From contig NC_067399.1 of the NCBI RefSeq assembly GCF_016432865.1, forward strand, positions 5,704,001 to 5,768,000: a stretch of DNA of 64,000 bases, read 5' to 3'. Made by a program: the position numbers and the translations under genes. A model generated the notes under the pieces. That model worked only from the letters and a program-made list of their open reading frames with translations, made no database searches and was not told the origin of the DNA. Below are positions 35,101 through 53,900 of this stretch, piece after piece (position 1 is the stretch's first letter; each line of letters begins with the position of its first letter). The stretch comes from Antechinus flavipes. Taxonomy: Eukaryota.

Positions 35101-37355
35101 CTAAAATGACCGAGACTTGAAATGTAGCATCACATGCTTTAGTTTCAATGTTAACCCCTAAATATCTCTCAATGGGCTTAGGGCAGGACCAACAATTCTC
35201 CATTTCTCCTCTGCCACGGCACTTGGACCTGTGCTGCCCACCCACCGAGAAGCTCGCTAAAAGTACAGGACTGGCTTGCTGCCTTCGGCCAGAGGACACT
35301 CTTCAGGGCACCCTGGGAAGTCAGTCCCCTGCCACTGGCTCTCATGCCCTCCCCCTGCTGGCTCAGTTCTGCAAAGACAGATGTTCACATTCAAAGCAAG
35401 GAAGGTCATCTCGGGGACAGCAGAGATCTTTTTACACTACTGAGTGCTCACTAAGGCCGGCTTATGGATCCTCTTTTATCTACACAGAATGGTCGAACCG
35501 TGAAGGAGACCCGCTCTCAGAAGCACAACGTCAGCAACGGCTGAGGAGGACGGACGCCGTCCTTCAAATAACCCACGTCCTATCCGTGATTGAGACTTTG
35601 TGGGGAAAAGAGCTTCTCTTGTAATAGAAGGAACAGCAATAAAGAAATTTCCCAAGAAGGGATGGAGGGAGGGAGGGGAAAAGTCGAAACAGAAGCGAGT
35701 TTAAGGGATAATGTTGTAAAAAATTACCCTGGCATGGATTCTGTCAATATAAAGTTATTATTAAATAAAATAAAATTAAAAAAAAAAATTTCCCAAGAAG
35801 GGAATCGGGCTCCTAGGACTCAATCCCAAATGCTCCGTGTAGTGCAAATGAATATTTAAAAACAAACTGGACGACAATAAGCAGTCGGAATTTCTGTAAT
35901 GACATTGGGACGTTCCCTGCTTGAGATAAAGGTGTAAAAATCATGTTCAAATGGAAAATAGAGAGAAATCCCATAAAGGTGGAGGGGGTGCTAAGTGTAA
36001 TAAGAGCTCCTAGTCACCAGGTAAAGGAAGAGAAGGGAGATAAGACCTGGAGCCTGACCAAAGGCCGCCCTGTGGCACAGATACCCGTGAACCCCCCAAT
36101 CACCATCTCAGCTTCTTAGCTCTCTTCAGTACAAAGACCCTACGGAAGCCCTGAGGCCAGAAACCCAAAATAAGTAAGTGTTCTTCCCTTCTTAGGGGAC
36201 GTGGGGGATATTTTAGCTCCAAACTTTGGGGACAGAAGAGCCCCTGGCTCTGGCTGCTCACCTCTTTTAAGACAGCCTTGAAAGAGGATCTTGTGAATCT
36301 CTGGGCCCGGTTTTGGGGGGCCCCGAAGCGCGTCTCGTTCCGTTTGCCCATCACGTCTGCTTTCAGCTTGGGAGCGTCGCCTTCCATGACGAAGAGCAGT
36401 TTTACTCCCATTAAGGTTAGAGATGAGATCCGAAAAAACAGGTTCCTGAACAGCCCAAACAGATCTAAATGAATCCCTGGCTCTGAGAAAAATCGGCGAG
36501 TGGCCAAGCCCTGCCCCCTATGCCCTGAGCCACGGCCGGCCGGCGTTGCCGCCTCACCCCTCTGCGCCCACGTGGATTGACTCTGTCCCTGGGCACATTC
36601 ACCCCAGCTCTCTGTGCCCTCGCAGAGGCAGACTGAGCCTCACACCTCCCCATCCAGCCCAGGAAATGACTTTGGATGTTCCATACACGTTAGATTCATT
36701 TCCTTGTGTTTGTGTCATTTGCCCTAAAAGCATGTAGCCACCTTGTGGGCAGGGAACGTGCCCTGAGGCCTCACACTGTGGCGGATGTGCGATCGCTCTC
36801 AGGCGTCCGGAGGCGATGCTGTGACATGTGAGTGAGCTTGCCTTAAGGGAGGCTGGGCCATGCATTCATCAGCCTCAACCTCTCCCCTGGGGTCACCAGG
36901 CTCTCGGGGCAAGACATAGTCAGGACAGATTGGCAGGCAATGCCACGCTTGCCACTCTTCTCCCATGCCGTGTCTCCTGAATGAGGAGCAGGAAATCTGG
37001 GGAGGTGACGCTCTCAAAAAACTCTGCCCACCACACCCCACGGAAGCAGGGAGACATAAGAATCAAGGCCACGGTGATGGATGTGGCCGCCACGAATCCA
37101 ACGCACCTGAGGTGGGGCTTGACATGGTGCCAGCCAGCTTTCATAAGAAGCAAGGCCACGGGGGACGGACGCGGCCACCATGAATCCAACGCACCTGAGG
37201 TGGGGCTTGACAACGATGCCGACCATCTTTTTGACGGCGAGTGCTTCGCACACCCAGAGACTCAGGTCGACGGCCAGGGTCTTCCCCTGGAGACTCCGGA
37301 GATGGGCGTGCTGCTTAACAGGCTCCAGAATCTGCCACAGATCGTTCACTCCCAT
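21955..37355 (-). CDS. GEN1: GEN1 Holliday junction 5' flap endonuclease (XPG/Rad2 family); 13 coding exons, 2604 nt, 867 aa, intact
   Basis: Exons 37355-37195, 36445-36262, 34799-34623, 33963-33853, 29111-29038, 27410-27319, 26389-26239, 25163-25127, 25031-24951, 24669-24539, 24325-24264, 23808-23659, 23147-21955. All junctions are GT-AG and phases are consistent. Motifs: MGVNDLW, AVDLS, VMEG, GEAEA, DDGD, GCDY, GVPGVG, and the C-terminal SPLPLAQRLKLRFQSS. Confidence 0.97.
23659..23808 (-). CDS. GEN1: GEN1 exon 13, 150 nt
   Basis: HYVMA...LTVEDATLFEAAYPEVVAQYQ...GKQSR; TTCAG| and |GTGAGT. Confidence 0.95.
24264..24325 (-). CDS. GEN1: GEN1 exon 12, 62 nt (chromodomain)
   Basis: ITRSRLRSGIPCLEILWQKP; CCAG| and |GTGTGT. 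Confidence 0.94.
24539..24669 (-). CDS. GEN1: GEN1 exon 11, 131 nt
   Basis: IFALEKLEWPRHYACEKLMGLLAHHDMVERELG...LRPL(R); TCCAG| and |GTAAC. Confidence 0.95.
24951..25031 (-). CDS. GEN1: GEN1 exon 10, 81 nt
   Basis: VIREFQVNKDRVTKKICFQRPNLLSFQ; CCAG| and |GTGCGT. Confidence 0.95.
25127..25163 (-). CDS. GEN1: GEN1 exon 9, 37 nt
   Basis: KACACQGFPFPE; CTAG| and |GTAAC. Confidence 0.93.
26239..26389 (-). CDS. GEN1: GEN1 exon 8, 151 nt
   Basis: SPADHELRGCRLCGSERYCEPHDPKYRCLCEWH...NSVK(K); CGCAG| and |GTGGGT. Confidence 0.95.
27319..27410 (-). CDS. GEN1: GEN1 exon 7, 92 nt
   Basis: FDQWKEESHSPDPPPAPVRKPVHCSVCAHP(G); TCCAG| and |GTAGG. Confidence 0.95.
27517..27670. repeat. 44-45 bp tandem repeat, ~3.5 copies, alternating A/B, GEN1 intron 6
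   Basis: GGAAACCGCCCCCGATCTGC at 27536, 27581 and 27625. Confidence 0.9.
29038..29111 (-). CDS. GEN1: GEN1 exon 6, 74 nt
   Basis: GVPGVGKELALKLVRSLKGQSLLQ(K); GAAG| and |GTAAGT. Confidence 0.95.
31165..31371 (-). mobile_element. MAR1-like SINE nested in L1
   Basis: TTATTTCAGTTGTGTCC...CATTTTACAGAG...AACTGAGGC...GATTTGAACTCAGG. Confidence 0.7.
31437..31816 (+). mobile_element. 5'-truncated L1 with a 3'-transduced segment and 13 bp TSD
   Basis: TSD AGAAATGGGAACT at 31424-31436 and 31817-31829; L1 3' end, A18 (31688-31705), ~100 bp non-L1 segment, ATTAAA (31786-31791), then a second A tail. Confidence 0.8.
32312..32927 (+). mobile_element. Probable solo LTR
   Basis: TG...CA ends, TATATAA at 32594-32600 and AATAAA at 32792-32797 in U3-R-U5 order; no clear TSD. 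Confidence 0.55.
33853..33963 (-). CDS. GEN1: GEN1 exon 5, 111 nt
   Basis: DPHVDCYTMSSIKRDLGLDRDALIGLAVLLGCDYLPK; TTAG| and |GTAAG. Confidence 0.96.
34623..34799 (-). CDS. GEN1: GEN1 exon 4, 177 nt
   Basis: CLDLLECLGVPWVQAAGEAEAMCA...NFTMNVK; CTAG| and |GTATGT. Confidence 0.96.
35663..35785 (+). mobile_element. Extremely 5'-truncated L1 3' stub with ~18 bp TSD
   Basis: AAATTTCCCAAGAAGGGA at 35645-35662 and 35786-35803 flanks a G-rich tract, GGGATAATGTTGTAAAAAATTACCC and an A-rich tail. Confidence 0.85.
36262..36445 (-). CDS. GEN1: GEN1 exon 3, 184 nt
   Basis: NLFFRISSLTLMGVKLLFVMEG...KAVLKE; TTCAG| and |GTGAGC. Confidence 0.96.
37055..37212. repeat. Tandem duplication (~88 bp period) spanning the GEN1 exon 2 / intron 2 boundary
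   Basis: Copies at 37055-37124 and 37142-37212 share a perfect 31 bp GAATCCAACGCACCTGAGGTGGGGCTTGACA. Confidence 0.92.
37195..37355 (-). CDS. GEN1: GEN1 coding exon 1 (exon 2; probable acceptor at 37381), 161 nt
   Basis: MGVNDLWQILEPVKQ...KPHL(R); donor CAG|GTGCGT. Confidence 0.96.
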
Positions 37356-39130: not shown

Positions 39131-40089
39131 CTGCTCAGCTCCTGAATCTGCCAGCTTCTCTCTGCTCACACTGCCCCTCCCCCAGCCTCTGACTGGGCTG
39201 CATGGCCAGGATGGTACATCACAATTGGCCCCAAGCTGCCCTGCCAGCCTCCTTGGAGGTGGCCAGCCCTCTGGGAGCCAGCCCAACTTGCCCTCTGTTC
39301 TGGAGTCCCTCTCTTCCTTCAAAAAGCAGCCCCTGCCACGTGGAGTTAATTCCGAGCTTCTTATTTCTAGCACCCGCTCGCCCTTCCCAGGCACTCTGGG
39401 ATGAGACTTTCTGATTCTTTTGGTTTTATTTGACACATTTTTCTGCGTGGTTGTGTCTCCCACAACAGGATAAAAAGTTGCCGAGCTGGTGTTCCCTTAC
39501 TTTGGTCTTGTTTCCCCAGGACGTGGCACAGCGTCTGCCCGCCGTGGCGGGCACTGACCTGCTTAGTGACTGGCCGTTCACTCCACTTGCGGTGAAGCAG
39601 CTGGAACATTGAGCCCCTTTGGAATCAAGGTCCAGTGCACATTTATGAGGCAGGTGACCCTCCCCCCAAGTCAACTCAAACTTTGTAATTTTCAGTTTCA
39701 TTAACTGAAAAACGGTCACGCTAATCGTCACTCACAGTAAAGGAAACGCTTCTTAAAGCGCCACATGCACACGTGTACATATATGTGTGGATACATACGT
39801 ATGTTCATACAAAACATCACCAAATGTGTTTTTAAAAACTCAAACAGGACCCGCACATGCCATTCAAAGGCAACAAGTGAACCCCCAGCTAGGGAAGCTC
39901 CAGCATGAACCGGCAGAAGTGCTCCTAAGAGCAGAGCGCCCCCCACTGGGCATCTCACAAAGGCGAGCTGTGAAGGGAAGGCAGCCTGGTCTGCCAGCTT
40001 ATGACATCTCCCTTCCTATCTCCCTACATCGCCTCTGGGCTGAGCCTCAGACAAGAGGCTCCTCCGAACAACATTTGCTCATGAGCTCA

Positions 40090-41907
40090 GGCCGGGCCCA
40101 GGCTCCGGCTGTCCCTGCCGCAGTGGGGGTCGGGCCCAGGCTCCCGGACGAGGCTCTGGCTGTCCCTCCTGCAGTGGGGGCCGGGCCCAGGCTGTCCCTG
40201 CCGCAGTGGGGCCGGGCCCAGGCTCCCGGACGAGGCTCCAGCTGTCCCTGCCTCAGTGGGCCGGGCCCAGGCTCCCGGACGAGGCTCCGGCTGTCCTTGC
40301 CGCAGTGGGGCCGGGCCCAGGCTCCCGGACGAGGCTCCGGCTGTCCCTCCTGCAGTGGGGCCGGGCCCAGGCTCCCGGACGAGGCTCTGGCTGTCCCTGC
40401 CTCAGTGGGCCGGGCCCAGGCTCCCAGACGAGGCTCCGGCTGTCCCTGCTGCAGTGGGGGCCGGGCCCAGGCTGTCCCTGCCGCAGTGGGGGCCGGGCCC
40501 AGGCTCCCGGACGAGGCTCCGGCTGTCCCTCCTGCAGTGGGGGCCGGGCCCAGGCTCCCGGACGAGGCTCCGGCTGTCCCTGCCGCAGTGGGGGTCGGGC
40601 CCAGGCTCCCGGACGAGGCTCCGGCTGTCCCTGCCGCAGTGGGGGTCGGGCCCAGGCTCCCGGACGAGGCTCCGGCTGTCCCTGCTGCAGTGGGGGCCGG
40701 GCCCAGGCTGTCCCTGCCGCAGTGGGGGCTGGGCCCAGGCTCCCGGACGAGGCTCCGGCTGTCCCTGCCGCAGTGGGGGCCGGGCCCAGGCTCCCGGACG
40801 AGGCTCCGGCTGTCCCTGCCGCAGTGGGGGCCGGGCCCAGGCTCCAGACGAGGCTCCGGCTGTCCCTGCCGCAGTGGGGGCCGGGCCCAGGCTCCCAGAC
40901 GAGGCTCCGGCTGTCCCTGCCGCAGTGGGGGGGGCCGGGCCCAGGCTCCCGGACGAGGCTCCGGCTGTCCCTGCCGCAGTGGGGGCCGGGCCCAGGCTCC
41001 CGGACGAGGCTCCGGCTGTCCCTGCCGCAGTGGGGGCCGGGCCCAGGCTCCCAGACGAGGCTCCGGCTGTCCCTGCCGCAGTGGGGGCCGGGCCCAGGCT
41101 GTCCCTGCTGCAGTGGGGGCCGGGCCCAGGCTGTCCCTGCCGCAGTGGGGGCCGGGCCCAGGCTCCCGGACGAGGCTCCAGCTGTCCCTGCCGCAGTGGG
41201 GGCCGGGCCCAGGCTCCCGGACGAGGCTCCGGCTGTCCCTGCCGCAGTGGGGCCGGGCCCAGGCTCCCGACGAGGCTCCGGCTGTCCCTGCCGCAGTGGG
41301 GCCGGGCCCAGGCTCCCAGACGAGGCTCCGGCTGTCCCTGCCGCAGTGGGGGGGGCCGGGCCCAGGCTCCCGGACGAGGCTCCGGCTGTCCCTGCCGCAG
41401 TGGGGCCGGGCCCAGGCTCCCAGACGAGGCTCCGGCTGTCCCTGCCGCAGTGGGGCCGGGCCCAGGCTCCCAGACGAGGCTCCGGCTGTCCCTGCCGCAG
41501 TGGGGCCGGGCCCAGGCTCCCGGACGAGGCTCCGGCTGTCCCTGCTGCAGTGGGGGCCAGGCCCAGGCTCCCGGACGAGGCTCCGGCTGTCCCTGCTGCA
41601 GTGGGGGCCGGGCCAGGCTCCCGGACCAGGCTCCGGCTGTCCCTGCTGCAGTGGGGGCCAGACCCAGGCTCCCGGACGAGGCTCCGCTGTCCCTGCCGCA
41701 GTGGGGCCGGGCCCAGGCTCCCAGACGAGGCTCCGGCTGTCCCTGCCGCAGTGGGGGCCGGGCCCAGGCTCCCGGACGAGGCTCCGGCTGTCCCTGCTGC
41801 AGTGGGGGCCAGGCCCAGGCTCCCGGACGAGGCTCCGGCTGTCCCTGCTGCAGTGGGGGCCAGGCCCAGGCTCCCAGACGAGGCTCCGGCTGTCCCTGCT
41901 GCAGTGG
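40090..41907. repeat. GC-rich VNTR in GEN1 intron 1; 51 bp unit with 31 bp short variants, ~38 copies
   Basis: Consensus GGGCCGGGCCCAGGCTCCCGGACGAGGCTCCGGCTGTCCCTGCCGCAGTGG; 38 CAGTGG anchors counted; G-run length varies between units. Confidence 0.98.
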
Positions 41908-42725
41908 ACTGGGCCAAACCAAGCAGCCCAGATGGGGTTTACCCTGGTAAATGTCCTGACATTCCCAGGAACTGCCATCAGGATGGAGGACGAACGCCCC
42001 CTGCTGGACTCTGATGGGGTGGCACGGGCGCAGCTTCTCCGGGTCCATGGGGCAGTCCCTCATTTAACTGAGATCCCCACAGTCCCAATGGTCGGAGCTG
42101 CTCCCGGCCCCGGCTTCCATCTCCCAGGGCCCCGAGAGCCTCCACCCATCCAGACCTCCATCCTGTGAATGGGGGTCGCCCCTGGGCGGGCTCCGGGAGC
42201 GCCCGGACACCCCCGCCCCGGCCGGGGCTCCCCGCCCCCAGAGGCGGAAGGGCTTCGGAGGGAAGCCCGCCTAAGGGGGGCCCCAGGAGGGGTGCGGGGC
42301 CCAGGAAGCAGGGGCGGCTAGGGACCCACCTGACAGGGGAGGAAGCTGTCCGGGAGCAAGTGCCCCGCGGCTGGATTTGCACTCGCTCTGGGAAGCAGAG
42401 ATGGGTCTGTCATTGAAAGGGGGAGGGAGGAACCGGAGGCGGTGCCCAGCGCGGAGCGGGGGTGCTGGGCTGTCCGCATTGGGAGGGCCCAGAAGCTAGA
42501 GCCTGGGGTGGGGGGACTCAGCCTAGAACACGAGGGGGTGTCTGTGCTGGGAAGGGGCCCGGGGGTCACATGGTCCTGCGGGGGCGGCGCTCCAGCCCCT
42601 CAACGCACCACCCCCGCTCCGGAGGCGACGCAAAATCCGAGCAGCCCCAGGCTCGGCCTCGGCCGCCCCGTCCCTCCCATTCTCCCCCGGGGTCCGTCCC
42701 CATTTCGGGCCCGCACCCCACTTAC

Positions 42726-42790
42726 CGTGAAGGCGCCGACGGGTGCAGAAGTCTCTGAGGCCGAGGCCGTCGCTGACTTCCCAGTTCTAA
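42726..42790 (-). other. GEN1: Probable GEN1 non-coding exon 1; TSS approximate
   Basis: Consensus donor ACG|GTAAG at 42726/42725, immediately downstream of CCAAT and GC boxes. Confidence 0.6.
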
Positions 42791-43029
42791 ATTGGCGCTC
42801 GCGCCTGGCCCCGCCCCTGAGCGGATGGACAGATTCCTCTGCCAATGGGAAACGCCGTCTTCCTTGCCCCGCCCCTCGTCTACCGGTTCCGGCTCCGGGA
42901 ACCGTCAGTACCGCCTTGGAAGGGCGGCCCCATGGGGCGCAAGCGCAGTATTGCCCAGCTCGGCTTCGCCCGAGGAATCGCGGGAAACTGCCGCTTCCCA
43001 GCCGAGATTCAGTCGGGGCCGTGCGGGGG

Positions 43030-43271
43030 CGGAGCGGCAGTTGCGCAAGCGCAAAGGGAGAGCTGGCTGCTGCCCCTCTCCTTCCGTAGTACAGTGGAGC
43101 GTTTTATCCTTATTGCAGCGGCTGGTTTTGGCGGGTTCCGTGGGCAGCCCGAGCCGCGGGCTCCCGTGGGGGCGAAGGCCAGGACGCCTGCGTGGTTTGG
43201 GGGGAACTGAACCCTCAAGTCGCTAAGTCCCACCGCCATCCTCCGCGCAGCGGCTCCTTGAACCTCGGCAG
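43030..43271 (+). other. SMC6: Candidate SMC6 non-coding exon 1; start uncertain
   Basis: Donor GCAG|GTAGGA at 43271/43272 downstream of the promoter motifs. Confidence 0.4.
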
Positions 43272-44130
43272 GTAGGAGGGGGAGGCCCTGAGGGATAAAG
43301 TTCAAGTTCTCTCAGGCGGAGAAAGGGGGGCGGGGTGGTGGAGACACAGACCCGAGGTAGAGACGTTCGTGGGGGGGACTGTCAGGACCAATGCGCGGAG
43401 GTGGGAGACGATGGGAAGGGCCGGAGGGGGGAGGCGGGTGGCGGCGTCCTCCTGTCCTTGCTGTGAGCACTTAAGGGGCGCCTACTGTATACCAACAAAA
43501 GCTCCAGGCAGCGCCTGCTCCGAACCCTGATTTAGAATCCTGGGGGGATGGGAGAGGGAGAAAGAGGAGAAAAGGAGAGGGGGAATCGAGGAACAGGAAG
43601 GAGGGAGAAAGAGAGAAACGGGGAAGGGAGAGGATGGGGGCGACTGAACCCTGTGGGGGAGGAGCACATCCCCTCTGGGGACTGGGTGGTCAAGAGGAGG
43701 CCCCTTGGGGGGTACAGATGACCACTAAGTGGTCACCAGGAGCTCCCTTGAGGGAGGGCATATGCCCACTGGGCTCTCAGCAGGGGGGCACATGTCTGCT
43801 GGACCCAGTAGATGGCGCCGTGCAGGAGTGGTACAGATGCCCGCTGGGCAGGAGGCCGTCCCTCCATTTCTGACTTGGGCCTTGTTCCCTGGAGGCCCCA
43901 GACCCCCTGGCAGCTCCGCGAGGGGCCCTTGCCTTCTCCATCTCCTTTGATGAGGAACCCGAGGCAGGCAGGGTGGCGCGCTGTCCAGGGGCCGCCCTGC
44001 GGGAGGTCCTGGGTTTTTGTGATCCCTGCGGGCTGATAAGCAGGCTCGGGAGCCCAGAGGGCCCCTTGCCGAGCGCTGGGTCGGCCGCTGGGCCCCTTGA
44101 TCCAGAGCTCCGTGAAACGCCCAAACCGCC

Positions 44131-45024
44131 GCGGCGCCCCTGCGGACCCCGCCTTACTGCAGGTGGCGCATCGGTACGTTTTGGGGCTGTTTGCGCAGTT
44201 TCTTTGAGGCGCCCCTGCGGACCCCGGAGGCTCCGCCTTACTGCAGGTGGCGCATTGGTACGTTTTGGGGCTGTTTGCGCAGTTTCTTTCTTTGAGGCGC
44301 CCCTGCGGACCCCGCCTTACTGCAGGTGGCGCATTGGTACAATTTGGGGGTGTTTGCGCAGTTTCTTTGAGGCGCCCCTGCGGACCCCGGAGGCTCCGCC
44401 TTACTGCAGGTGGCGCATTGGTACGTTTTGGGGCTGTTTGCGCAGTTTCTTTCTTTGAGGCGCCCCTGCGGACCCCGCCTTACTGCAGGTGGCGCATTGG
44501 TACAATTTGGGGGTGTTTGCGCAGTTTCTTTGAGGCGCCCCTGCGGACCTCGGAGGCTCCGCCTTACTGCAGGTGGCGCATTGGTACGTTTTGGGGCTGT
44601 TTGCACAGTTTCTTTCTTTGAGGCGCCCCTGCGGACCCCGCCTTACTGCAGGTGGCGCATTGGTACGTTTTGGGGCTGTTTGCGCAGTTTCTTTCTTTGA
44701 GGCGCCCCTGCGGACCCCGCCTTACTGCAGGTGGCGCATTGGTACAATTTGGGGGTGTTTGCGCAGTTTCTTTGAGGCGCCCCTGCGGACCCCGGAGGCT
44801 CCGCCTTACTGCAGGTGGCGCATTGGTACGTTTTGGGGCTGTTTGCACAGTTTCTTTCTTTGAGGCGCCCCTGCGGACCCCGCCTTACTGCAGGTGGCGC
44901 ATTGGTACGTTTTGGGGCTGTTTGCACAGTTTCTTTCTTTGAGGCGCCCCTGCGCACCCCGGAGGCTCCGCCTTACTGCAGGTGGCGCATTGGTACGTTT
45001 TGGGGCTGTTTGCGCAGTTTCTTT
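44131..45024. repeat. Minisatellite of 11 units (75/79/84/88 bp), each with a CTCF-like core ACTGCAGGTGGCGCA
   Basis: Unit starts 44131, 44206, 44294, 44369, 44457, 44532, 44620, 44699, 44774, 44862, 44941. Length variants come from a 9 bp (GGAGGCTCC) and a 4 bp (TTTC) indel. Confidence 0.97.
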
Positions 45025-46468
45025 GTGCACTGCATCTGGGTCCGGATTTCTTTCTGTTAGAGATGGAGAAAATCGGGACGCGGGGAAAGCTCGGCTTTGT
45101 GGCCTCGGCGTGAAGCGGGAGGGTCTGGGTCTGAGTACAGACTTATGGCGGAGGGATAACAAGGAACGGTGGGGTAGGAGAGGGTGGGAACAGGGGGGTG
45201 TCTAAGGGAAGCGGGACTGGGCACGCAGATTGATGGAGAGGGGATAAAGAGGGAGGGATCCCTGGGCGGGGAGAAGCGGAGCAATACGGCCAGTGAAGGA
45301 GCAGAATTAAAGTAGAAGGTTATCACCAGGATGGAAAATGGGAGACGCACAAACACTAGAACAAGGACCAGGAGCAGAAAGAAAAAAGGGCGAGGGATCA
45401 TTGGTCTCAAAGTCAAACCTCCATTCGGTCGAGAGAGACCTAGATTCTACGTTAGCCACGTGATTGTTTTAGACGCGGGTCTGTGTGCGAGGATGCATTT
45501 CTCTGCCTCCGTGTCTGCGTGTGTTTGTCTGTGTACACACACGTACGTGCCTGTGCCCGTGGGGAGGGGGCAGGGAAATGAGGGACTAAAGTGAAAACCG
45601 CACAGCGGAGAACAAAAGTAACTACTGAGAAAGCACGGGGCGCCCGGGAACACGGTGTCTTCTGGTCTGGATACTTTTTGACAGGGAAATTTGTTACACA
45701 TTTTGAATCCTTCCTGATAAGCTGCCAGGCACGTGACAGTATTTTGTTTGTTTTCCTTTTCTTTTTCTATTTTGCTTTTTCTTATTTTCTATCTAGTTTC
45801 AAATAAATATCAGAAAAAAAAAAAACCAAAAGGTCTGAAGAGGAGGTTTAGAATGTCATGTTTGTGATTGGTTTGTTCCTTCTCTGTCCAAACCAGGCAG
45901 TTTAGGAGGCTGGAGAGGTGCTAATTTCTCAGGTATTTGAATTTCCTATTTCTAGAAACGTTTTTTTGGTTACCTTCATTTAGAGATATTTAGAGGCAAT
46001 AAACTTGAAGATCTTTCCCTTTGTGGGGCTGATGGGAGGGGAAGAAGGAAATGCATGAGTTAATGCCTTAAAAAAGCAGCTTGGCCTTGCCTTACGTGTG
46101 CACGGGGTAAACGTTCAGTTTTCACCAGAGGGGCTCACTCCGCCAGTCATCCTCGTAGACTGGAGTCCCCCTTGCGGCCTCTTGTTGGCAGGGCCTAGAT
46201 CTGATAGGCTCCCGAGAGCCCCGTTTGGCTAAAGAGTCCCAGAGGTGGGGGGAAGCTCTCGCCTGGGGCTCCCCAGTCACTGTCGGTGGCGAGATGAGAG
46301 CTTTGGGTTGGAGTTTGTAGTCACTGCACAGTCCGGTTATCAGCAAAGAGGAATGAGAAGAACTTACGTTGTGTGGAGAGGAGAGGGAACAGAAGCGCCC
46401 CGCGTCTCTCCTGGGCTCTGAAAACAGGCCTGGGAGAGGGGAGATGGCCCCTCCCCCATGTGGCGGGG

Positions 46469-46606
46469 TTTTCTGTTCTCATTCTTTTTCTTTGAGGCAG
46501 TTGCCCAGGGTCCCACAGACAGGAAGTGGTGTCTGAGGCCAGATTTGAAATCGGGTCCTCTTGATTTCAGGGCTTGTGCTCTAACCACTGCGCCACCATC
46601 TGCCCC
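46469..46606 (-). mobile_element. tRNA-derived SINE, WSINE1-like
   Basis: Reverse strand reads GGGGCAGATGGTGGCGCAGTGG (A box)...GATTTCAAATCTGG (B box) and an A-rich tail. Confidence 0.8.
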
Positions 46607-47417
46607 TGTGGCTGCTCAGATAGTCATTCGTTGAGGGCACGTGTCTCTAGGTGAATCAGAGCGGGGAATGAGGAAAATTAATGTCGTGTGGGTCACGTCA
46701 CCAGCACTTGTCTGTGATCCAGCCCTCGTTCTGGGGGCCGGGCGGATTCTGCAGGAGTGATTGAGCCCCCCATGGTCATTCCCAGCCCCTGAGTGTCTGC
46801 TCCTTCACCAGCTTGGCTCAGCCCCTCCCAAGGGGGTCCCCTCCGGTCTCCCTCTGTCTTTGTGATCAAGGTGAGGGGTGTCGGTCACAGGATTGCTCAT
46901 GAAGCACCTGGTGTTCCTGAAATGTCAGGGAGCGGCACCCGCCCCCAAAGGCCAGCCCGCCCGCCAGTCGGGGGGACGTCCGAGGGAGGGGCTGTCAGAC
47001 CCTGCGGGAGGAAGCCGCCCTGGGCCTCGCTCAGAGGCAGTCGCCTCCATTTGTTGGTTCTCGCTAATAAATGATTGCTCTCGCTCGGAGCTTTTATGGC
47101 ATTTTCTTCGGGACGTTTCCCACGTACCTCAGGCATTGGAGGCGGGCTGGTGCTTTGGGGGGCCAGAGTTTAATTTCTGCTAAATGCCAGGGGTCGCAAA
47201 AGTCGGTGCTCTCTGATCCCTGCCCCACTCCCCCGGGCCCTGGGCCCCCGCTCCCTGGCCTGGGTGCAGGGGCCTGGAGTTCCTCCCTCTCGGCAGCGAT
47301 CCGAGCGGCAGAACAGCCGCTGCCACGGAGCGCGCTCGGCTCGGATCCCGTGTTCCTGCAGTGTGTCTCCCGGAGTCCTTCATCTTTAACAAGCTGCTCT
47401 TCTCTTGTGTCTCCTAG

Positions 47418-47511
47418 GTCCGGACCTTTCGTCTGGGCCGGGAGCCGCCCTGAGGAAGGGGACGCGCCGGAGCTCGGGAGTTCGGCCTGACTCGGGCTTG
47501 CCTCATAACTG
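47418..47511 (+). other. SMC6: Candidate SMC6 5' UTR exon (94 nt)
   Basis: Polypyrimidine tract and CTAG| acceptor; CTG|GTGAGA donor; 331 bp upstream of the ATG exon. Confidence 0.55.
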
Positions 47512-47847
47512 GTGAGAACCAAACAAAAGCCCCTCCTCGTTGCTGGCCAGGCCTTCCCCTGCGCTTCCCACTCCCTGACCCCCTCGGTCACCAGCCAGGG
47601 GGCTCCCCCGTGATGTGGCAGGAGAGGGCCTCGGGGGAGGCCACATGTGCCGGACGGGGCTAGAGTGTGGGGAGCGCCGCCCCCGGGCCCGACGGGAAGT
47701 GCTTATCGAGGCCCCGCCGGGGCAGCTCTTGTAGCGTTGGGGGCAGGGCGACGGTGACTCGCTGGAGGCCTGGACACCCCCTCCCCCCCCGGGCAGGGTC
47801 TGAGGCCGCCCCCGAGCACCTCGGGACTCCTCGTTGTTCTAGGTCCC

Positions 47848-47988
47848 ATGGCGAAAAGAAAGGAAGAGAATTTTCTGCCCGTGGGGATGCAGAAGAAGCA
47901 AAGGCAGGAGCAGGGCGATGAGTCTGAGGAGAGCGAGGAGGAAGAGTCCCTCATGCCTCTGTCCCCCGGGACCGCCTCAACCCCGGTG
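47848..47988 (+). CDS. SMC6: SMC6 first coding exon (acceptor 47843), 141 nt coding
   Basis: [21 protein letters not shown]...STPV; |GTGAGT. Confidence 0.9.
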
Positions 47989-50900
47989 GTGAGTAGTGGG
48001 TCATCGACGAGGAAACGCTGTGGGCAGCTGCCCGTTCCCTTGGGATCCCAGAGGGCAGGAGGGGCCTGTCCAGCGCGGGGCTCTCCTGCCTCCCCTTCCC
48101 CGCCGCTCCGGTCTGCGGCAAGAACATCTGTACCCACGGGTGTGGCCCTAGCCGGCCAGACTGTGTCCTTGAGAAAGTCCGGCCTCCTGGGCCCTGAGTC
48201 CCCCGGCCGCGGCCCGTGTGTCTGGGTTACCGCGATGGGGAGCGCTCACGCTGCCCGGAACAGGCCTGCGTCGGGTCTCTTAGCCGAGGGAGGGTCGGCT
48301 GGGCCAGGCGGGCATGGGGGCAGGGGCGGTGCCCGCCATGGTCAGGCCCGCGCTGACGCCCGTGGGTCTTTAACAGATAACGGCCGAAGTCGGGATCATC
48401 GAGAGCATCCAGCTGAAGAACTTCATGTGCCACGCCATGCTGGGGCCTTTTAAGTTCGGATCCAACGTCAACTTTGTGGTGGGAAACAATGGGAGTAAGT
48501 TGGCGTCTCTTTGGGATTCACGGTGTCGGTCTGTGCCCCAAGAGCCCCGGGCATTGGCCTGGGGGGGAGGGCAGCTGTTGGTGGCCTTCCCTCCATTGTC
48601 CCCCCTCCCCATGTGTGGGTGACCTCCTGGGGGCTTGTGGGCATCCTGGCATCCAGAGAAAAGCTGACAAGCGTCTGCTGGGCTTGGCCAGGCCCGAGAG
48701 GGGCCCTTTCTCGTGGCCCCGAGTTGGGGGTGAACGAGTCTCGGTCATTTTCTCTGTCCGCTGGCCCCTCCTCAGGATCCATGGGGTCTTCCCCGGCCCT
48801 GGCTCACCGGAGCCCCTCCCAGCATGTCGTGCTCTGCTGGGCGAGGTGCTTGTGGGCACGCGTCTGTGCCGATGGCGGGGCAAGTCTGGGAAGCTCCAGC
48901 AGTCCGAGGCCCCTCAGGCCCGTTTCTCTCTGGGGTCCTCAGTTTCCCCTGAATTCTCTGGGCCGTTGCTGTTGGCGGGCCATGGAGGGCGTTGGCCCCG
49001 GGCATCCTCGGCAATGGCCCGGGGGCAGTCCTGGCTTCCGGCTGCCCTCTTGGCTGGCCTGGGTGAGTCCCATGACTTCTCACTCCTGGGACTTCTCTCG
49101 GGTCCTTCTTCGAGAAGAAAAATGGCTTCTCGTGGTTTTGCTGGAATTAGGTTCTGTTCTGTTCCCCGTAAATCTGTCAGGAGAAGCCGGACAGGCGCTC
49201 TCCGGGCTCGGAGTTAGTCGGGCGTTGGGTGGGACGCCTAAACTTGGGCCGCTCTGGTTCTGGTTCTGCTCGGTCTGAGCCGTTGTGCCCTGGGGGGGGG
49301 CCCAGCATGGCCTGAGCCGGCTTAGCGGCTGCTTCCAGGACAGACGGAACTGGACCCGAGAAACGGGGCTGACTCGCTCCGGGGCAGAATCTCAGCTCGG
49401 GGGGCGGGGGCGCCTCAGTCTCGGCCCACCCGCTTTTCAGATGAGCCTCCGAGGAAGGTGGTTTGTCATGTCTCATTCTGGGGGAGGAGGAGAGTTCTCC
49501 CTGACTATGTCTGGAAGTGCTCGCAGGTTGCGGGTGATGGCTGGCCGTGCCCTTCGAGCTCCTCTGCTCGCTCAGGGTGCCCTGAGGAGGGGGCAGTGCC
49601 CGCTGGGCACATGGCAGCAGGGGTCGGGACAGGGTTCGAGCCCGCTGTCCGGGGGGGGGGGAGGGGGGCCAGGAAGAAGCCTCCTCTCAGATGGTGACTG
49701 GGCTCTTGACATCCTTCCCCCCTCAGGTGGCAAAAGCGCCGTCCTGACCGCGCTCATAGTGGGTCTCGGAGGGAAAGCTACGGCCACCAACAGAGGCTCC
49801 TCTCTGAAAGGGTTTGTGAAGGACGGGCAGAGGTGAGTGCCAGGGGTCGGAGCCTTGGGCCTCTCCCGGGGCTGCCAGCGCGGGAGGAGGTGGCTGCGCC
49901 CCTGCCCGGGGTGCGGGCGAGATGGAGGCGGCGTTTCCTCCCTCACTGACGCCCCCAGGAAAGGTGGGTGGGTGGGAGGGAGCCAGAAGCCCCGCCCTGG
50001 GTTTTGTGCTCATGGTCAGGCTGCAGGGAGTGAAACCCTGAAGTGCGGGGTGAAGGGAACAGGGCGGGGGGAGGGGGCAGGAAATAAGGGAGCAGAGGGA
50101 ATGAGGGGTCCAGTTGTTGCCCCTCCCCCTCCCCCCTGCAGCCAAGAGGGAAGTTAGAAGGGGTGGCCCTGGGGGCGGGGGGACGTGAGGCTGCTGGGGA
50201 GGCTGCCCTGGGCCTGGCTCCCGCCCTCCCGCTGCTTGTCAAGGGCTGTTTGGTAAACCCGGGTTGGAAACGACTCTAGAAAAGCACAGGCCCAGAAAAG
50301 CACCGTGATGACGGTGGTTGGGGCCGAGTATCCCTCCTCATCCTGCCCTTCTCTCCCCCGAGAGAACCGTCCCACATCACCGAGGCCGGGAGGGCGGCGC
50401 CGTCCGCGGCCTCCCCTGCGCTCCCCCTCCCCCATGCTCTGCCCACAAAGCTGCCAGGCGGCTCCCTGGTGACCACGGCCTGCCCGGCCTCGGCGGCTGC
50501 TGCTGCTTCCGGGCCAGCACGCGGCCCCGTCTCTTTGGCTTTGACAGTCCCGGGGGGCCTTTGCCCAAATCGGGGACCCCCGACCCTGTCTGCGGGCCCC
50601 CAAGAGACACTTCCTTCCCCACCTCCCCGTCTTCCCATCATTCAGGAGCTTTGGGTCTGAACCTGGCTCTGGTGTTTTGTGGCCTCATTAGGAGCTTGGT
50701 CCCCAGGGCCCTTGGGGGTCCCTTCCAGCTCAGAACCTCAGCCCTGAGGCAGGGAGGAGCCCGACACCATATTGTGAAGAGCTCTCAGAGCCTTGGGGGT
50801 GGGCTTTCAGCAAGCGGGGCCCCCAAACCCGAGTGTTACCGGCCTGGCGAGGAAGGATGTGGCTGTGACCCAGAGACCCGAGGCTTCGAGCCTGGAAGGG

Positions 50901-53900
50901 GACATGGCAGCCTCGGCAGAAATAGGGGACGGGACAGCGAGAGCCCCAGGAGGCTGTGACCGGGATGAAGGCTCTGCCAGACAGGAGCGGGGGGTCGGGG
51001 GGGGGGGGTCCATGGGCAGTCTAGATGGGTTGGCACCGGCCCCTGTGCCTGGTACATCCCAGGAGCAGCCGGAATCTGGGGTCAGAATCGGGAAATGAGG
51101 GGAGCCCTGGCGGCCCTGATAGGGAAGGGAAAGGCCGGACACGGGGAGGCACGAGTCAGAGAAGGCCGTCATCCTGCTGGGGGCGGGCAGCCGTGGAGAG
51201 CGGCCGGCCGAAGCCTGGCCCACGTGGGGGTCCCCCGGGCCTTGGCTGTCCCCGCGAGGACGACCGGGCTGCTCTGGTCCCGTTTGCAGCTCTGCCGACA
51301 TCTCGATAACGCTGCGGAACAGAGGGGAGGACGCCTTCAAGCCGAACGTGTACGGGGACTCCATCACGGTGCAGCAGCACATCAGCCTGGAGGGCAACCG
51401 CAGCTACAAGCTCAAGGGCCAGACCGGTGAGCTCTGACCCGGGCCACCCGGGCCTCCCGGAACCCCGGCCTCCCAGACACCCCGGCCTCCCGGAACCCCG
51501 GCCTCCTGGCCGCTGGCGCCTCGCCTGCTCTGGGGCTTCTGGCCTTCCCCAGACCGAGGGTGGTCCCTGGGCCCCGAGCCGCCCCCTGACAGCCGGGCCG
51601 GACATTCGCTCCTGCAGCCTTGGCCACGCCCTCTGCCTCCACTGCCAGTTTGGCAGAGCGGGAACGTGCCAGGGCTGCAGATGTTCCCCGAACGCCCTGG
51701 CCGCACCTTGGGGCCCTCTGGGCCATGATTGCCAGAGTGGAGGGTCTCAGCTCACTTCCCCACACAGACCCTCTTTTTGTTTGGTCGTGGGCGGGGCCCT
51801 CTGGGGATGCTCCGCCCCTAGAGCCCCTCTTCCTCCCTGCGCAGTTCTCCCCAAGAGCCCCCGAGGAGGGTTGCCTCCTGTTGGCTTTTCGCCTCCAGGA
51901 GGAGCGTAGTCCTGGGGCATCCTGAGCTCCCTCCCTGTCCCAGCGCGCCGGATCCCTTCACTCCTCGCCGCCTCCCCCACCCCACCCCCCTTTGCTTCCT
52001 GCTGTGGTTTTCCCTGAGGCCTCAGCCTGTGCCCACCCCAGAGGAATCCCAGTGCCATGAAGGGCCCCCTGCCACCTCTGACAGATGGTCCCAAACTGCC
52101 CTCGGGCTGCCCACTCACCCTGCACTCTCTAAGCCCCTCCTGCCAAGTGCGCCTCGATGCAGACGGGATTACCCTGGGCCTCACTTGGTGCCCGTCAGAC
52201 TTTGCTTGATGCTTGCCAGCCCCACTCAGTGCCCTGCTCAGTGCCCACTGGGCCATTTGGTGCCCATCAGGCCCTGTTTGGTGCCCACTGGGCCCTGGGG
52301 GCAGGGTCAGCGCAGCTCTGATGGGGCGGGGGAGCGAGCTCCCGGGGGATCGCAGAGCTTGCGCAGCCAATGTCACTGGATGTCCCGTGTGTGTTTTTCT
52401 AACTAGGAAATCTGGTTTCTAACAAGAAGGAAGAGCTCACGGCCATCCTCGACCATTTTAACATCCAGGTAACGGCGCGGCGTCCCGCCTGCGAGCAGTT
52501 TGTGCTTTTAGGGAGCAGAAGGGCCTCTTTAGGAGGTGGTCCCTCCGAGCGCCCCCTGCCCAGGCTGCGCTGAGCTGTCCCCCCCAAGCCCGAGGGCACG
52601 TCCCCCCGCCCCCGGCATCTCCACGTGCTCCCGTAGCACAGGAACACGCTCCTCTGGCCCGTCCGGCCCACCTCAGGGCCGCCGCCAGGAAACCTGCCCT
52701 CCTTCCCGGCCCCCGCGGCCCCGAGCCCTTAGTCCTTAGCACAGATGCTCGTAGGCTAACGGGCAAAGAGATGAGCAAGAAGGAGCTGCCAGAAGGGATG
52801 GGAGGGAGGGGCAGGACTGGATTTGAACCCTCCAGCCTCAGTCTGGTCCTTTTAGCCCTCACCTGGCCCCTTCCTCTGGGTGCTCGCTCCCCTCTGCCCA
52901 GCAAATTCACGAGAGTAGAGGCAGCCTGGCGATTGGGGGCAGAAGCCATGAATGGGGGGGAAGGGAGGGGGTTCCCATCTCAGTGCCCCCTGCAGGAAGA
53001 CTGAGACTTGGATAGGAAGGTCCGGTGTGGACCTGAGTGGAGGCTGGTGGAGCTCCTGGGCCTGGAGCCCACGGCCCTGTGCAGGCTGTCGCCTCCGGGC
53101 TCCGGCCGTCTCCCGCCCCCACGGCCTGGCCCCCACAGAGGCTGCACCCAGACCCGCCTCAGTCCTCCAAAGCCCACCGCGGTGTATCCAGGTGGGCACT
53201 AACGACTCGCTGTCTGTCCGTCCCCAGGTGGACAACCCCGTGTCCATTCTGACCCAAGAGATGAGCAAGCAGTTCTTACAGTCCAAGAACGAAGGGGACA
53301 AATACAAGGTAAGGGAGCCCAGGAGCACGGCCTGCCTCCGCCATGTTGGGCGAGGGCCCGGGACCCCCGGCCGGGGTGTGACCCTGCCTCGCCCTGCGGC
53401 CCCCACTGGCCCTGGCAGAGAGTGGCAAGACCCAGGGGGCACCTGCAGAGACCCATATTCAGAACTATCCGGATGCCCTGGACAAATCACGTCACCCTGC
53501 GAGACGAGCTGGAGAAGGAGATGGCCAAGTGGTCCGGCATGTCTGCCAAGAGAGCCCCCGGGGGCTCCGGGAGTGGGGCACGGCTGGGGGCCGGAGCCCT
53601 GGGGCCAGGAGGGCTGCTCCGGGCTGACGCAGGCCCTGGGAGAACGGCCCCAAGAGCGCCGGGCTCGATGGCCGTGGATGTTGGGCCCTTCTGAATGGCC
53701 CATCCCCCTCCTCGGTAAAGGTGGCGCCAGGGTTGGGCCTGCAGTCCAGGCTGGTGTCTCCCTCCCAGACAGGGCGCCCTCTGGGGGCTCATTGGGCGAC
53801 TCCCCTCTGCTGGGTTCTGTTGGTAGCCGGTGTTCTGGAACTGACCCAGAATCTGCCGGGGCCGTGAGCCAGGGAGAAGCGACCTTGGGCTTCGAGGGGC

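What the first reader, a model, noticed from the sequence alone, without database searches (positions are those of the whole stretch)
44131..45024. Eleven-copy co-oriented array of CTCF-like sites beside the SMC6/GEN1 promoter
Seen in sequence: all 11 units keep ACTGCAGGTGGCGCA unchanged while flanks vary. This matches the CTCF core (CCASYAGRKGGCRS) except at the first C, and it contains a CpG that could make binding methylation-sensitive. A TGCGGACCC resembling the CTCF upstream motif precedes the core, and the 9 bp GGAGGCTCC insertion in the 88/84 bp units moves it away. Unit order is 75-88-75-88-75-88-79-75-88-79-84, a higher-order dimer that changes phase. Established: clustered CTCF sites in tandem repeats act as strong boundaries (H19 ICR, DXZ4). 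Inference: a lineage-specific, copy-number-variable loop anchor that could shield housekeeping SMC6/GEN1 from neighbouring developmental enhancers or silencing.
Basis: partly seen in the sequence, partly recalled or inferred. Interest (0 to 1): 0.75.

Follow-up and report, generated by a model that had tools for sequence, protein, structure and literature searches.

The report
Promoter-side minisatellite with weak CTCF motifs
A real 11-unit tandem repeat sits in the first intron of SMC6, about 1 kb from the promoter it shares with GEN1 in a marsupial genome, but its CTCF-like motif is only a weak match and shows no sign of selection, so it is most likely an ordinary minisatellite that may bind CTCF weakly at best.

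Summary

1. The core departs from the CTCF consensus at two positions, not one. It scores about 10 of 26 bits (p about 5e-5). At least 12 single-copy sites in the window score higher.
2. The invariance carries no weight. The units differ by only about 7 substitution events and 2 indels, so an untouched 15-mer is expected 17-27% of the time.
3. The only CpG in the core is at position 12, which is methylation-insensitive in vitro. The upstream-like motif lies 6 or 15 bp from the core, not the canonical 8-9 bp.

The promoter context holds. GEN1 (- strand) and SMC6 (+ strand) are head to head. The CpG-island core and best splice donors place the shared promoter near 42.7-43.3 kb, so the array is in SMC6 intron 1. 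Stronger CTCF motifs bracket the promoter in divergent orientation.

Contigs of related species break at or near the array's edges, so the array is shared, not an assembly artefact.

CTCF binding was not testable. The scan has noted four similar CTCF-motif minisatellites elsewhere in this genome. This is a new member of a known kind, of low interest.

The parts
44133..45024 (+). Minisatellite of 11 units (75/79/88 bp; last unit truncated) with 163-bp and 242-bp higher-order periods. GC 0.605, 66 CpG, CpG observed/expected 0.81.
   Evidence: TRF; unit parse; unit alignment A1; composition
44156..44170 (+). First of 11 identical cores ACTGCAGGTGGCGCA. The others start at 44240, 44319, 44403, 44482, 44566, 44645, 44724, 44808, 44887 and 44975. 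Each is a weak CTCF core match that also contains the E-box CAGGTG.
   Evidence: Exact search; PWM 9.6-10.2 bits of 24-26, p 5e-5 to 7e-5
43802..43820 (+). Stronger single-copy CTCF motif match, 330 bp upstream of the array and in the same orientation.
   Evidence: 15.7 bits, p 2.3e-6
41992..42010 (-). Strong single-copy CTCF motif match on the other side of the CpG island, in the opposite orientation.
   Evidence: 16.5 bits, p 1.4e-6
39934..39952 (-). Strong single-copy CTCF motif match just left of the 51-bp array.
   Evidence: 16.0 bits, p 1.9e-6
42500..43500 (.). CpG-island core (GC 0.65-0.69, observed/expected 0.78-0.90), the inferred SMC6/GEN1 bidirectional promoter.
   Evidence: sequence; flanked by the best donors on both strands
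43200..43271 (+). Putative end of the non-coding SMC6 exon 1 (donor CAG|GTAGGA, first intron base 43272). The exon start is not determined.
   Evidence: Donor scan; the ATG exon has its own acceptor, so an upstream exon must exist. Inference, no RNA data.
42726..42800 (-). Putative end of the non-coding GEN1 exon 1 (donor ACG|GTAAGT, first intron base 42725 on the - strand). The exon start is not determined.
   Evidence: Donor scan; sequence. Inference, no RNA data.
47419..47512 (+). Putative SMC6 5'UTR exon (acceptor ...ctcctag|, donor CTG|GTGAGA).
   Evidence: Sequence; donor scan. Inference.
47843..47988 (+). SMC6 start-codon exon (ATG at 47848, MAKRKEENF..., 47 codons, donor GTGAGT at 47989).
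   Evidence: Downstream exons match SMC6 chains in the PDB (9lwi_A, E 1e-28 and 7e-14).
37194..37355 (-). GEN1 start-codon exon (MGVNDLWQILEPV...).
   Evidence: Pfam XPG_N E 1.1e-8. The exon at 34605-34799 matches XPG_I, E 5e-19.

Best explanation
This is an ordinary GC- and CpG-rich minisatellite in the first, non-coding intron of SMC6. It lies about 0.9 kb past the inferred exon-1 donor and about 1 kb from the CpG-island promoter shared with GEN1, in a dasyurid marsupial genome. It grew by slippage and unequal exchange of one-, two- and three-unit blocks, and it is still being homogenised. That is why a 15-mer, and in fact a 23-mer, is identical in all copies. The founder unit happened to contain a sub-optimal CTCF core. 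Its 3' two-thirds (GCAGGTGGCGC) fit the consensus, but its 5' triplet is ACT instead of CCA. Amplification copied that one weak site 11 times. Any CTCF occupancy would be low-affinity and opportunistic, helped by multiplicity and by the CpG-island setting. It would be secondary to the three stronger single-copy motifs that bracket the promoter. Shown: the array, its structure, the motif score, the lack of excess conservation and the gene context. Inferred: the exact first exons, the growth mechanism and low occupancy.
For: Array structure and higher-order periods of 79, 163 and 242 bp. Units 2=4 and 3=5=8 are identical, as expected from recent block duplication. About 7 substitution events and 2 indels explain all variation, so the invariant core is expected by chance (P 0.17-0.27). 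The PWM score is about 10 of 26 bits, p about 5e-5. Twenty-eight sites outside the array score at least as high in the window, and at least 12 score above 12 bits. A random unit of local composition reaches this score in 2-4% of trials. The 44-bp array at 27517-27668 also has a near-threshold hit of 8.8 bits. The upstream-like motif is off the canonical spacing (PMC9004084, PMC10287918). There is no CpG at the methylation-sensitive C2 (PMC8084297). A preprint reports that high G/C flanks lower CTCF affinity (10.64898/2026.01.05.696797), and the array's upstream flank is G/C-rich. Contigs of related genomes break at or near the array edges, as tandem repeats do.
Against: All the most information-rich core positions (C2, A6, G7, G10, G11, C12) are intact, and the mismatches fall only in the 5' triplet. 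In an in-vitro finger-mutagenesis study, fingers 3-5, which read the 3' part of the core, were dominant on several probes (PMC6251859). The array has CpG-island composition (observed/expected 0.81), so it may be unmethylated and accessible. It is co-oriented with the strong site at 43802 and opposed to those at 41992 and 39934, the divergent pattern typical of boundaries. It has persisted in species up to about 4.6% diverged. Eleven weak sites could add up to real occupancy.
Confidence: 0.55

Rival explanations
1. One reading: the array is a working multi-site CTCF platform. Eleven co-oriented sites hold CTCF and stall cohesin arriving from the SMC6 side. Together with the opposite-strand sites left of the promoter, they form a boundary whose strength depends on copy number.
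For: The core passes p<1e-4 with every key position intact. Strict co-orientation. CpG-island composition. Divergent arrangement with the stronger sites at 39934(-), 41992(-) and 43802(+) around the promoter. The array is present in related species. Tandem arrays that bind CTCF are known, for example DXZ4 (PMC3491370). Weak marsupial SINE-borne M1 motifs are bound at hundreds of sites in opossum (PMC3368268).
Against: The score is about 16 bits below the optimum and about 50-fold short of the p<1e-6 benchmark (10.64898/2026.07.18.739380). There is no excess conservation of the core. The upstream motif is mis-spaced. The methylation switch is not supported by the position of the CpG (PMC8084297). 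No binding data exist here.
Confidence: 0.28
2. The array is a promoter-proximal regulatory VNTR read by other factors. Every unit carries an E-box (CAGGTG), and 10 of 11 units carry a CCAAT box on the - strand. It would act as an intronic enhancer or silencer of SMC6/GEN1 whose effect scales with copy number.
For: 11 CAGGTG and 10 ATTGG (CCAAT on the - strand) in the array. It sits in intron 1 within about 1 kb of the promoter. First-intron VNTRs with regulatory effects are known (own knowledge, e.g. the SLC6A4 intron-2 VNTR).
Against: Six- and five-base words are expected by chance in any 79-bp unit. No matrix-based test was run for these factors. No conservation or expression evidence.
Confidence: 0.12
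3. The array is an assembly artefact, either a collapsed or a falsely expanded repeat.
For: Short-read contigs cannot span it. One bin (44400-44599) has no contig laid in any run.
Against: In three independent genomes, contigs end at 44151-44162 and resume at 44995-44999, exactly at the array edges. A fourth genome's contig ends at 44127, just left of the array, and then runs 35 bases into an 88-type unit. Array words are present in the runs.
Confidence: 0.03

Closest known systems
DXPas34 minisatellite at the mouse Tsix 5' end (own knowledge)
   Same: A CpG-rich tandem array of short units about 1 kb downstream of a promoter, with a CTCF-type motif in the units.
   Different: DXPas34 has experimentally shown CTCF/YY1 binding and a genetic role in X-inactivation. 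Here there are no binding data, and the motif is weaker.
DXZ4 macrosatellite (PMC3491370) and the H19/IGF2 imprinting control region (PMC8084297)
   Same: Repeated, co-oriented CTCF sites acting together.
   Different: DXZ4 units are kilobases long. H19 ICR sites carry the CpG at core position 2, which makes binding methylation-sensitive. This array has T after C2, and its CpG is at the insensitive position 12.
SINE-borne CTCF motifs in marsupials (MAR1_Mdo in opossum, PMC3368268)
   Same: A lineage-specific repeat that multiplies a core-only (M1) CTCF motif with no properly spaced upstream motif. A SINE head in this window (57440-57458) scores 9.1 bits, similar to the array core.
   Different: That spread is by retrotransposition to dispersed sites. 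This is local tandem amplification, and derivation of the unit from a SINE was tested and not supported.
Ordinary GC-rich minisatellites (VNTRs) in CpG-rich first introns
   Same: Unit size, higher-order structure, homogenisation and GC richness. The same promoter has a second array (51-bp units) on its other side.
   Different: Nothing found here sets this array apart from that class except the weak CTCF-like word.

Membership tests
Minisatellite / VNTR | Head-to-tail array of 10-100-bp units with high inter-unit identity | tested here: met
   11 units of 75-88 bp, TRF score 1169-1290. Mean pairwise identity 0.96, several units identical.
Minisatellite / VNTR | Length polymorphism between individuals | tested here: inconclusive
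   Short-read contigs break at the array. A 69-base word block specific to the 75-bp variant unit has depth 36.6 against 19-28 in flanking contigs, although there are 3 copies in the window. This hints at fewer copies in that individual, but the tool warns that depth is not copy number.
CTCF binding site (core motif M1) | Matrix match at a stringent threshold (p<1e-6, or at least 1e-5) | tested here: not met
   9.6-10.2 bits, p 5e-5 to 7e-5 under three backgrounds.
CTCF binding site (core motif M1) | Key contact positions C2, A6, G7, G10, G11, C12 present | tested here: met
   Core read directly. Mismatches are only at positions 1 and 3.
CTCF binding site (core motif M1) | CTCF occupancy in vitro or in vivo | not testable with these tools
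   No ChIP or EMSA data. No RNA or ChIP run was listed for this organism.
Two-part CTCF site (upstream motif plus core) | 9-mer upstream motif 5-6 bp from the 19/20-mer core (about 8-9 bp from the CC) | tested here: not met
   The gap is 6 bp in the six short units and 15 bp in the five long units. Spacing from PMC9004084, PMC10287918 and PMC3368268. The upstream consensus itself (TGCAGTNCC) is from my memory; the unit matches 6 of its 8 fixed bases.
Methylation-switched CTCF insulator (H19 ICR type) | CpG at core position 2 | tested here: not met
   C2 is followed by T. The core's CpG is C12-G13, where methylation has almost no effect in vitro (PMC8084297, PMC6222495).
Tandem-repeat CTCF boundary (DXZ4, DXPas34 type) | One co-oriented motif per unit | tested here: met
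   11 of 11 on the + strand, none on the - strand.
Tandem-repeat CTCF boundary (DXZ4, DXPas34 type) | Boundary or loop-anchor activity | not testable with these tools
   No Hi-C or Micro-C data.
CpG island | GC above 0.5-0.55, CpG observed/expected above 0.6, over more than 500 bp | tested here: met
   Array GC 0.605, observed/expected 0.81 over 892 bp, continuing to about 45750.

The most novel reading that the evidence does not exclude
In dasyurid marsupials, local minisatellite amplification, rather than SINE spread, could be a recurrent way of making clustered CTCF sites. On this reading the array would be a working, copy-number-tunable half of a divergent boundary centred on the SMC6/GEN1 housekeeping promoter. 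The scan's four other CTCF-motif minisatellites in the same genome would be further instances.
Probability: 0.15. Interest if true: 0.55.

Novelty: new member of a known kind. Interest (0 to 1): 0.25.

Why it matters
If the array did bind CTCF, it would be a natural allelic series (by unit number) for asking how many weak sites make a boundary at a housekeeping promoter. It would also be an example of CTCF-site birth by tandem amplification in a marsupial. As the evidence stands, its main value is as a caution. An identical motif in all copies of a young tandem repeat is one event, not eleven, and says nothing about selection.

Tried and rejected
1. SINE-head origin of the core. The core shares GGTGGCGCA.TGG with the A-box head of the marsupial SINE copies in the window. 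Local alignment of a three-unit block to two SINE copies gives scores that 3-62 of 300 shuffles reach. The head-like piece is on the + strand and the tail-like piece on the - strand, which is inconsistent with a single SINE. Rejected as unsupported.
2. Structured RNA. Rfam gives no match at gathering score in the whole window. Unit folds have z-scores of -0.3 to -1.1 on both strands. Rejected.
3. Coding sequence. ORFs cross the array in several frames only because it lacks stops. The unit lengths 75, 79 and 88 do not keep one reading frame. Rejected.
4. Other copies of the unit.
5. RNA evidence for the first exons. The single run search returned no RNA run, so exon 1 of both genes rests on splice-site and CpG-island inference.
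6. Cross-species test of core versus flank conservation. The single read-laying run showed where contigs lie but listed no differences inside the array, so this could not be done.

Full report
OBSERVATION. The sequence at 44133-45024 is a clean tandem array. Tandem Repeats Finder gives periods of 79, 163 and 242 bp with scores of 1169-1290. Splitting at the invariant unit start gives 11 units of 75, 88, 75, 88, 75, 88, 79, 75, 88, 79 and 82 bp, the last one truncated. The 15-mer ACTGCAGGTGGCGCA occurs exactly 11 times, always on the + strand and nowhere else in the window. One statement is wrong. Against CCASYAGRKGGCRS the core departs at two positions (A for C at position 1, T for A at position 3), not one.

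IS THE INVARIANCE MEANINGFUL? No. The alignment of the 11 units has 88 columns with 7 substitution columns and 2 indels (a 9-bp GGAGGCTCC insertion and a 4-bp CTTT). Units 2 and 4 are identical, and so are units 3, 5 and 8. The variation therefore traces to a handful of events that were then copied in blocks. The core lies in a 23-column invariant run, and other invariant runs are 12, 10, 7 and 7 columns long. If 6-8 events are placed at random on a 79-column unit, a given 15-mer is untouched with P = 0.17-0.27. A longest invariant run of at least 23 arises with P = 0.58-0.85. It removes the argument for selection but not the possibility of binding.

HOW GOOD IS THE CTCF MATCH? I scored both strands of the window with the 19-column JASPAR MA0139.1 count matrix. 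Its consensus (TGGCCACCAGGGGGCGCTA) and column sums (908-913) are as I remember them, but it should be re-run with the database copy. Each array core scores 9.6-10.2 bits out of a possible 24-26 bits, p = 5e-5 to 7e-5 under uniform, 60% GC and 68% GC backgrounds. That passes the lenient 1e-4 cut-off and fails 1e-5. A recent preprint uses p<1e-6 because about 80% of such hits are true sites (10.64898/2026.07.18.739380). The window holds 28 non-array sites that score at least as high, and at least 12 that score above 12 bits. A random 79-bp circular unit drawn from a first-order model of the array, of the 42-56 kb region or of the whole window has an equal or better hit in 2.5%, 3.8% and 2.0% of trials. 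The 11 copies are one amplified event, so the effective evidence is one weak hit at roughly P = 0.03, before allowing for the many minisatellites in a genome. In favour of binding, all the most informative positions (C2, A6, G7, G10, G11, C12) are present, and both mismatches lie in the 5' triplet. In a finger-inactivation study, fingers 3-5, which read the 3' part of the core, dominated on several probes (PMC6251859).

THE TWO ADD-ONS. The literature places that motif 5 bp, less often 6 bp, from the 19-bp core. That equals 7 bp once the two degenerate leading core positions are trimmed, or about 8-9 bp from the CC (PMC9004084; PMC10287918; 33/34-bp two-part motif in PMC3368268). A 1-bp change of spacing already lowers affinity (10.64898/2026.01.05.696797). 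In the array the gap to the position equivalent to CC is 6 bp in the six short units and 15 bp in the five long ones, so neither class has the canonical spacing. Methylation: in vitro, methylation of C2 blocks binding, whereas methylation of C12 has almost no effect or slightly helps. The H19 sites carry their CpG at position 2 (PMC8084297; PMC6222495). Here C2 is followed by T, and the only CpG of the core is C12-G13. The proposed methylation switch is therefore not supported by the known mechanism.

CONTEXT.
- GEN1 lies on the - strand. Its start-codon exon is at 37194-37355 (Pfam XPG_N, E 1e-8), and a further exon at 34605-34799 matches XPG_I (E 5e-19).
- SMC6 lies on the + strand. Its start codon is at 47848, and downstream exons match SMC6 chains in the PDB (E 1e-28 and 7e-14).
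- The array lies in the 10.4 kb between the two start-codon exons.
- The SMC6 ATG exon is preceded by a splice acceptor, so at least one non-coding exon lies upstream.
- The densest CpG island is at 42500-43500 (observed/expected 0.78-0.90).
On the + strand it finds CAG|GTAGGA at 43272 (8.5 bits). A higher-scoring + strand donor lies outside the island at 46871 (11.0 bits).
- I infer, without RNA data, that the bidirectional promoter lies between about 42726 and 43271. On that reading the array is in SMC6 intron 1, 0.86 kb past the exon-1 donor. 'Beside the promoter' is therefore fair.
- The array and its right flank up to 45750 also have CpG-island composition (observed/expected about 0.8).
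- Three much stronger single-copy CTCF matches bracket the island: 39934-39952 (-, 16.0 bits), 41992-42010 (-, 16.5 bits) and 43802-43820 (+, 15.7 bits). This divergent arrangement is typical of domain boundaries. It is the better candidate for any CTCF function at this promoter, and the array would add to its + side.

RELATED GENOMES. One run search returned only DNA-like runs of coded organisms. I laid contigs of four of them on 42400-48399.
- Flank divergence is about 0.4% in organism A (7 of 1763 bases), 1.4% in B, 2.7% in D and 4.6% in E.
- In A, B and E, contigs end at 44151-44162 and resume at 44995-44999, exactly at the array edges. Array words are present in these runs. This is how a tandem repeat behaves in a 31-mer assembly.
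- In D, one contig ends at 44127 and continues with 35 bases of an 88-type unit, so at least a unit is present there too.
- The array is therefore real and predates these splits, yet its units are 96-100% alike. That is concerted evolution, the normal behaviour of a minisatellite.
- No differences inside the array were listed, so core-versus-flank conservation between species could not be measured.
- A word block specific to the variant 75-bp unit has a depth of 36.6, against 19-28 for flanking contigs, although the window has three such units. This hints at copy-number difference, but the tool warns against reading depth as copy number.

WHICH GENOME? The SINE at about 46490-46605, with word depths in the 100,000s in all four runs, has the head typical of marsupial tRNA-derived SINEs (my recollection). 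Earlier notes of this scan name the genome as Antechinus flavipes (unchecked). Those notes also list four other minisatellites carrying co-oriented CTCF motifs on other pieces of the same genome. I did not re-test those. In opossum, MAR1_Mdo SINEs carry a core-only CTCF motif that is bound at hundreds of copies (PMC3368268). A SINE head in this window scores 9.1 bits (57440-57458), about the same as the array core.

ORIGIN AND OTHER READINGS. Derivation of the unit from a SINE head is not supported. There is no Rfam family, no unusual RNA fold (z from -0.3 to -1.1) and no consistent reading frame. Each unit also carries an E-box (CAGGTG, 11 of 11), and 10 of 11 units carry a CCAAT box on the - strand. 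A regulatory VNTR read by other factors cannot be excluded, but such short words are expected by chance.

VERDICT. The most likely reading (about 0.55) is an ordinary, homogenising minisatellite in the CpG-rich first intron of SMC6 that happens to carry one weak CTCF-like word per unit. A working CTCF cluster remains possible (about 0.28), mainly because of multiplicity, the CpG-island setting and co-orientation with a strong neighbouring site. Another regulatory role has about 0.12, and an assembly artefact about 0.03. Tandem arrays of CTCF sites are a known kind (DXZ4, PMC3491370; DXPas34 and the H19 ICR from established knowledge). This is at most a new, weak member.

Noticed in passing
window 40107-41907: A second, larger minisatellite of about 35 units of 50-51 bp (32-bp variants also occur), GC 0.78-0.79. 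It lies on the GEN1 side of the same CpG island, in the inferred GEN1 intron 1. Its best CTCF matrix score is only 4.5 bits, but strong - strand CTCF matches sit at both of its ends (39934-39952 and 41992-42010).
   Followed up: partly
window 39934-39952, 41992-42010, 43802-43820, 52981-52999: Single-copy CTCF motif matches of 15.7-17.8 bits (p 5.6e-7 to 2.3e-6). The first three bracket the SMC6/GEN1 CpG island in divergent orientation. The fourth is a - strand site in an SMC6 intron that would be convergent with the + sites.
   Followed up: partly
window 27517-27668: A 44-bp tandem repeat (3.4 copies) whose unit also carries a near-threshold CTCF-like word (8.8 bits). GC-rich minisatellites here often come close to the motif.
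   Followed up: no
window 46490-46605 (- strand) and 57250-57460 (- strand): Two copies of a tRNA-derived SINE with the marsupial-type head. Word depth in all four laid genomes is in the 100,000s. The 57440-57458 head scores 9.1 bits on the CTCF matrix.
   Followed up: partly
window 47419-47512 and 46871: A possible extra non-coding SMC6 exon (good acceptor and donor) between the array and the ATG exon. The strongest + strand donor of the interval (AAG|GTGAGG at 46871) has no assigned exon.
   Followed up: no
window 44133-45024, within each unit: The unit start (GGCGCCCCTGCGG) is an imperfect inverted copy of the core (CTGCAGGTGGCGC), so each unit can form a 12-pair hairpin. The fold energy is not beyond shuffled controls.
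   Followed up: yes
window 44127-44215 in run X8 (organism D): A contig of the roughly 2.7%-diverged relative ends at 44127 and rejoins at 44215 (87 bases skipped, TCG between), and its right flank resumes only at 45196. The array edges therefore differ in that species.
   Followed up: no
window 43540-43631 and 45200-45800: Purine-rich low-complexity stretches on both sides of the array, with raised word depth in all laid genomes.
   Followed up: no
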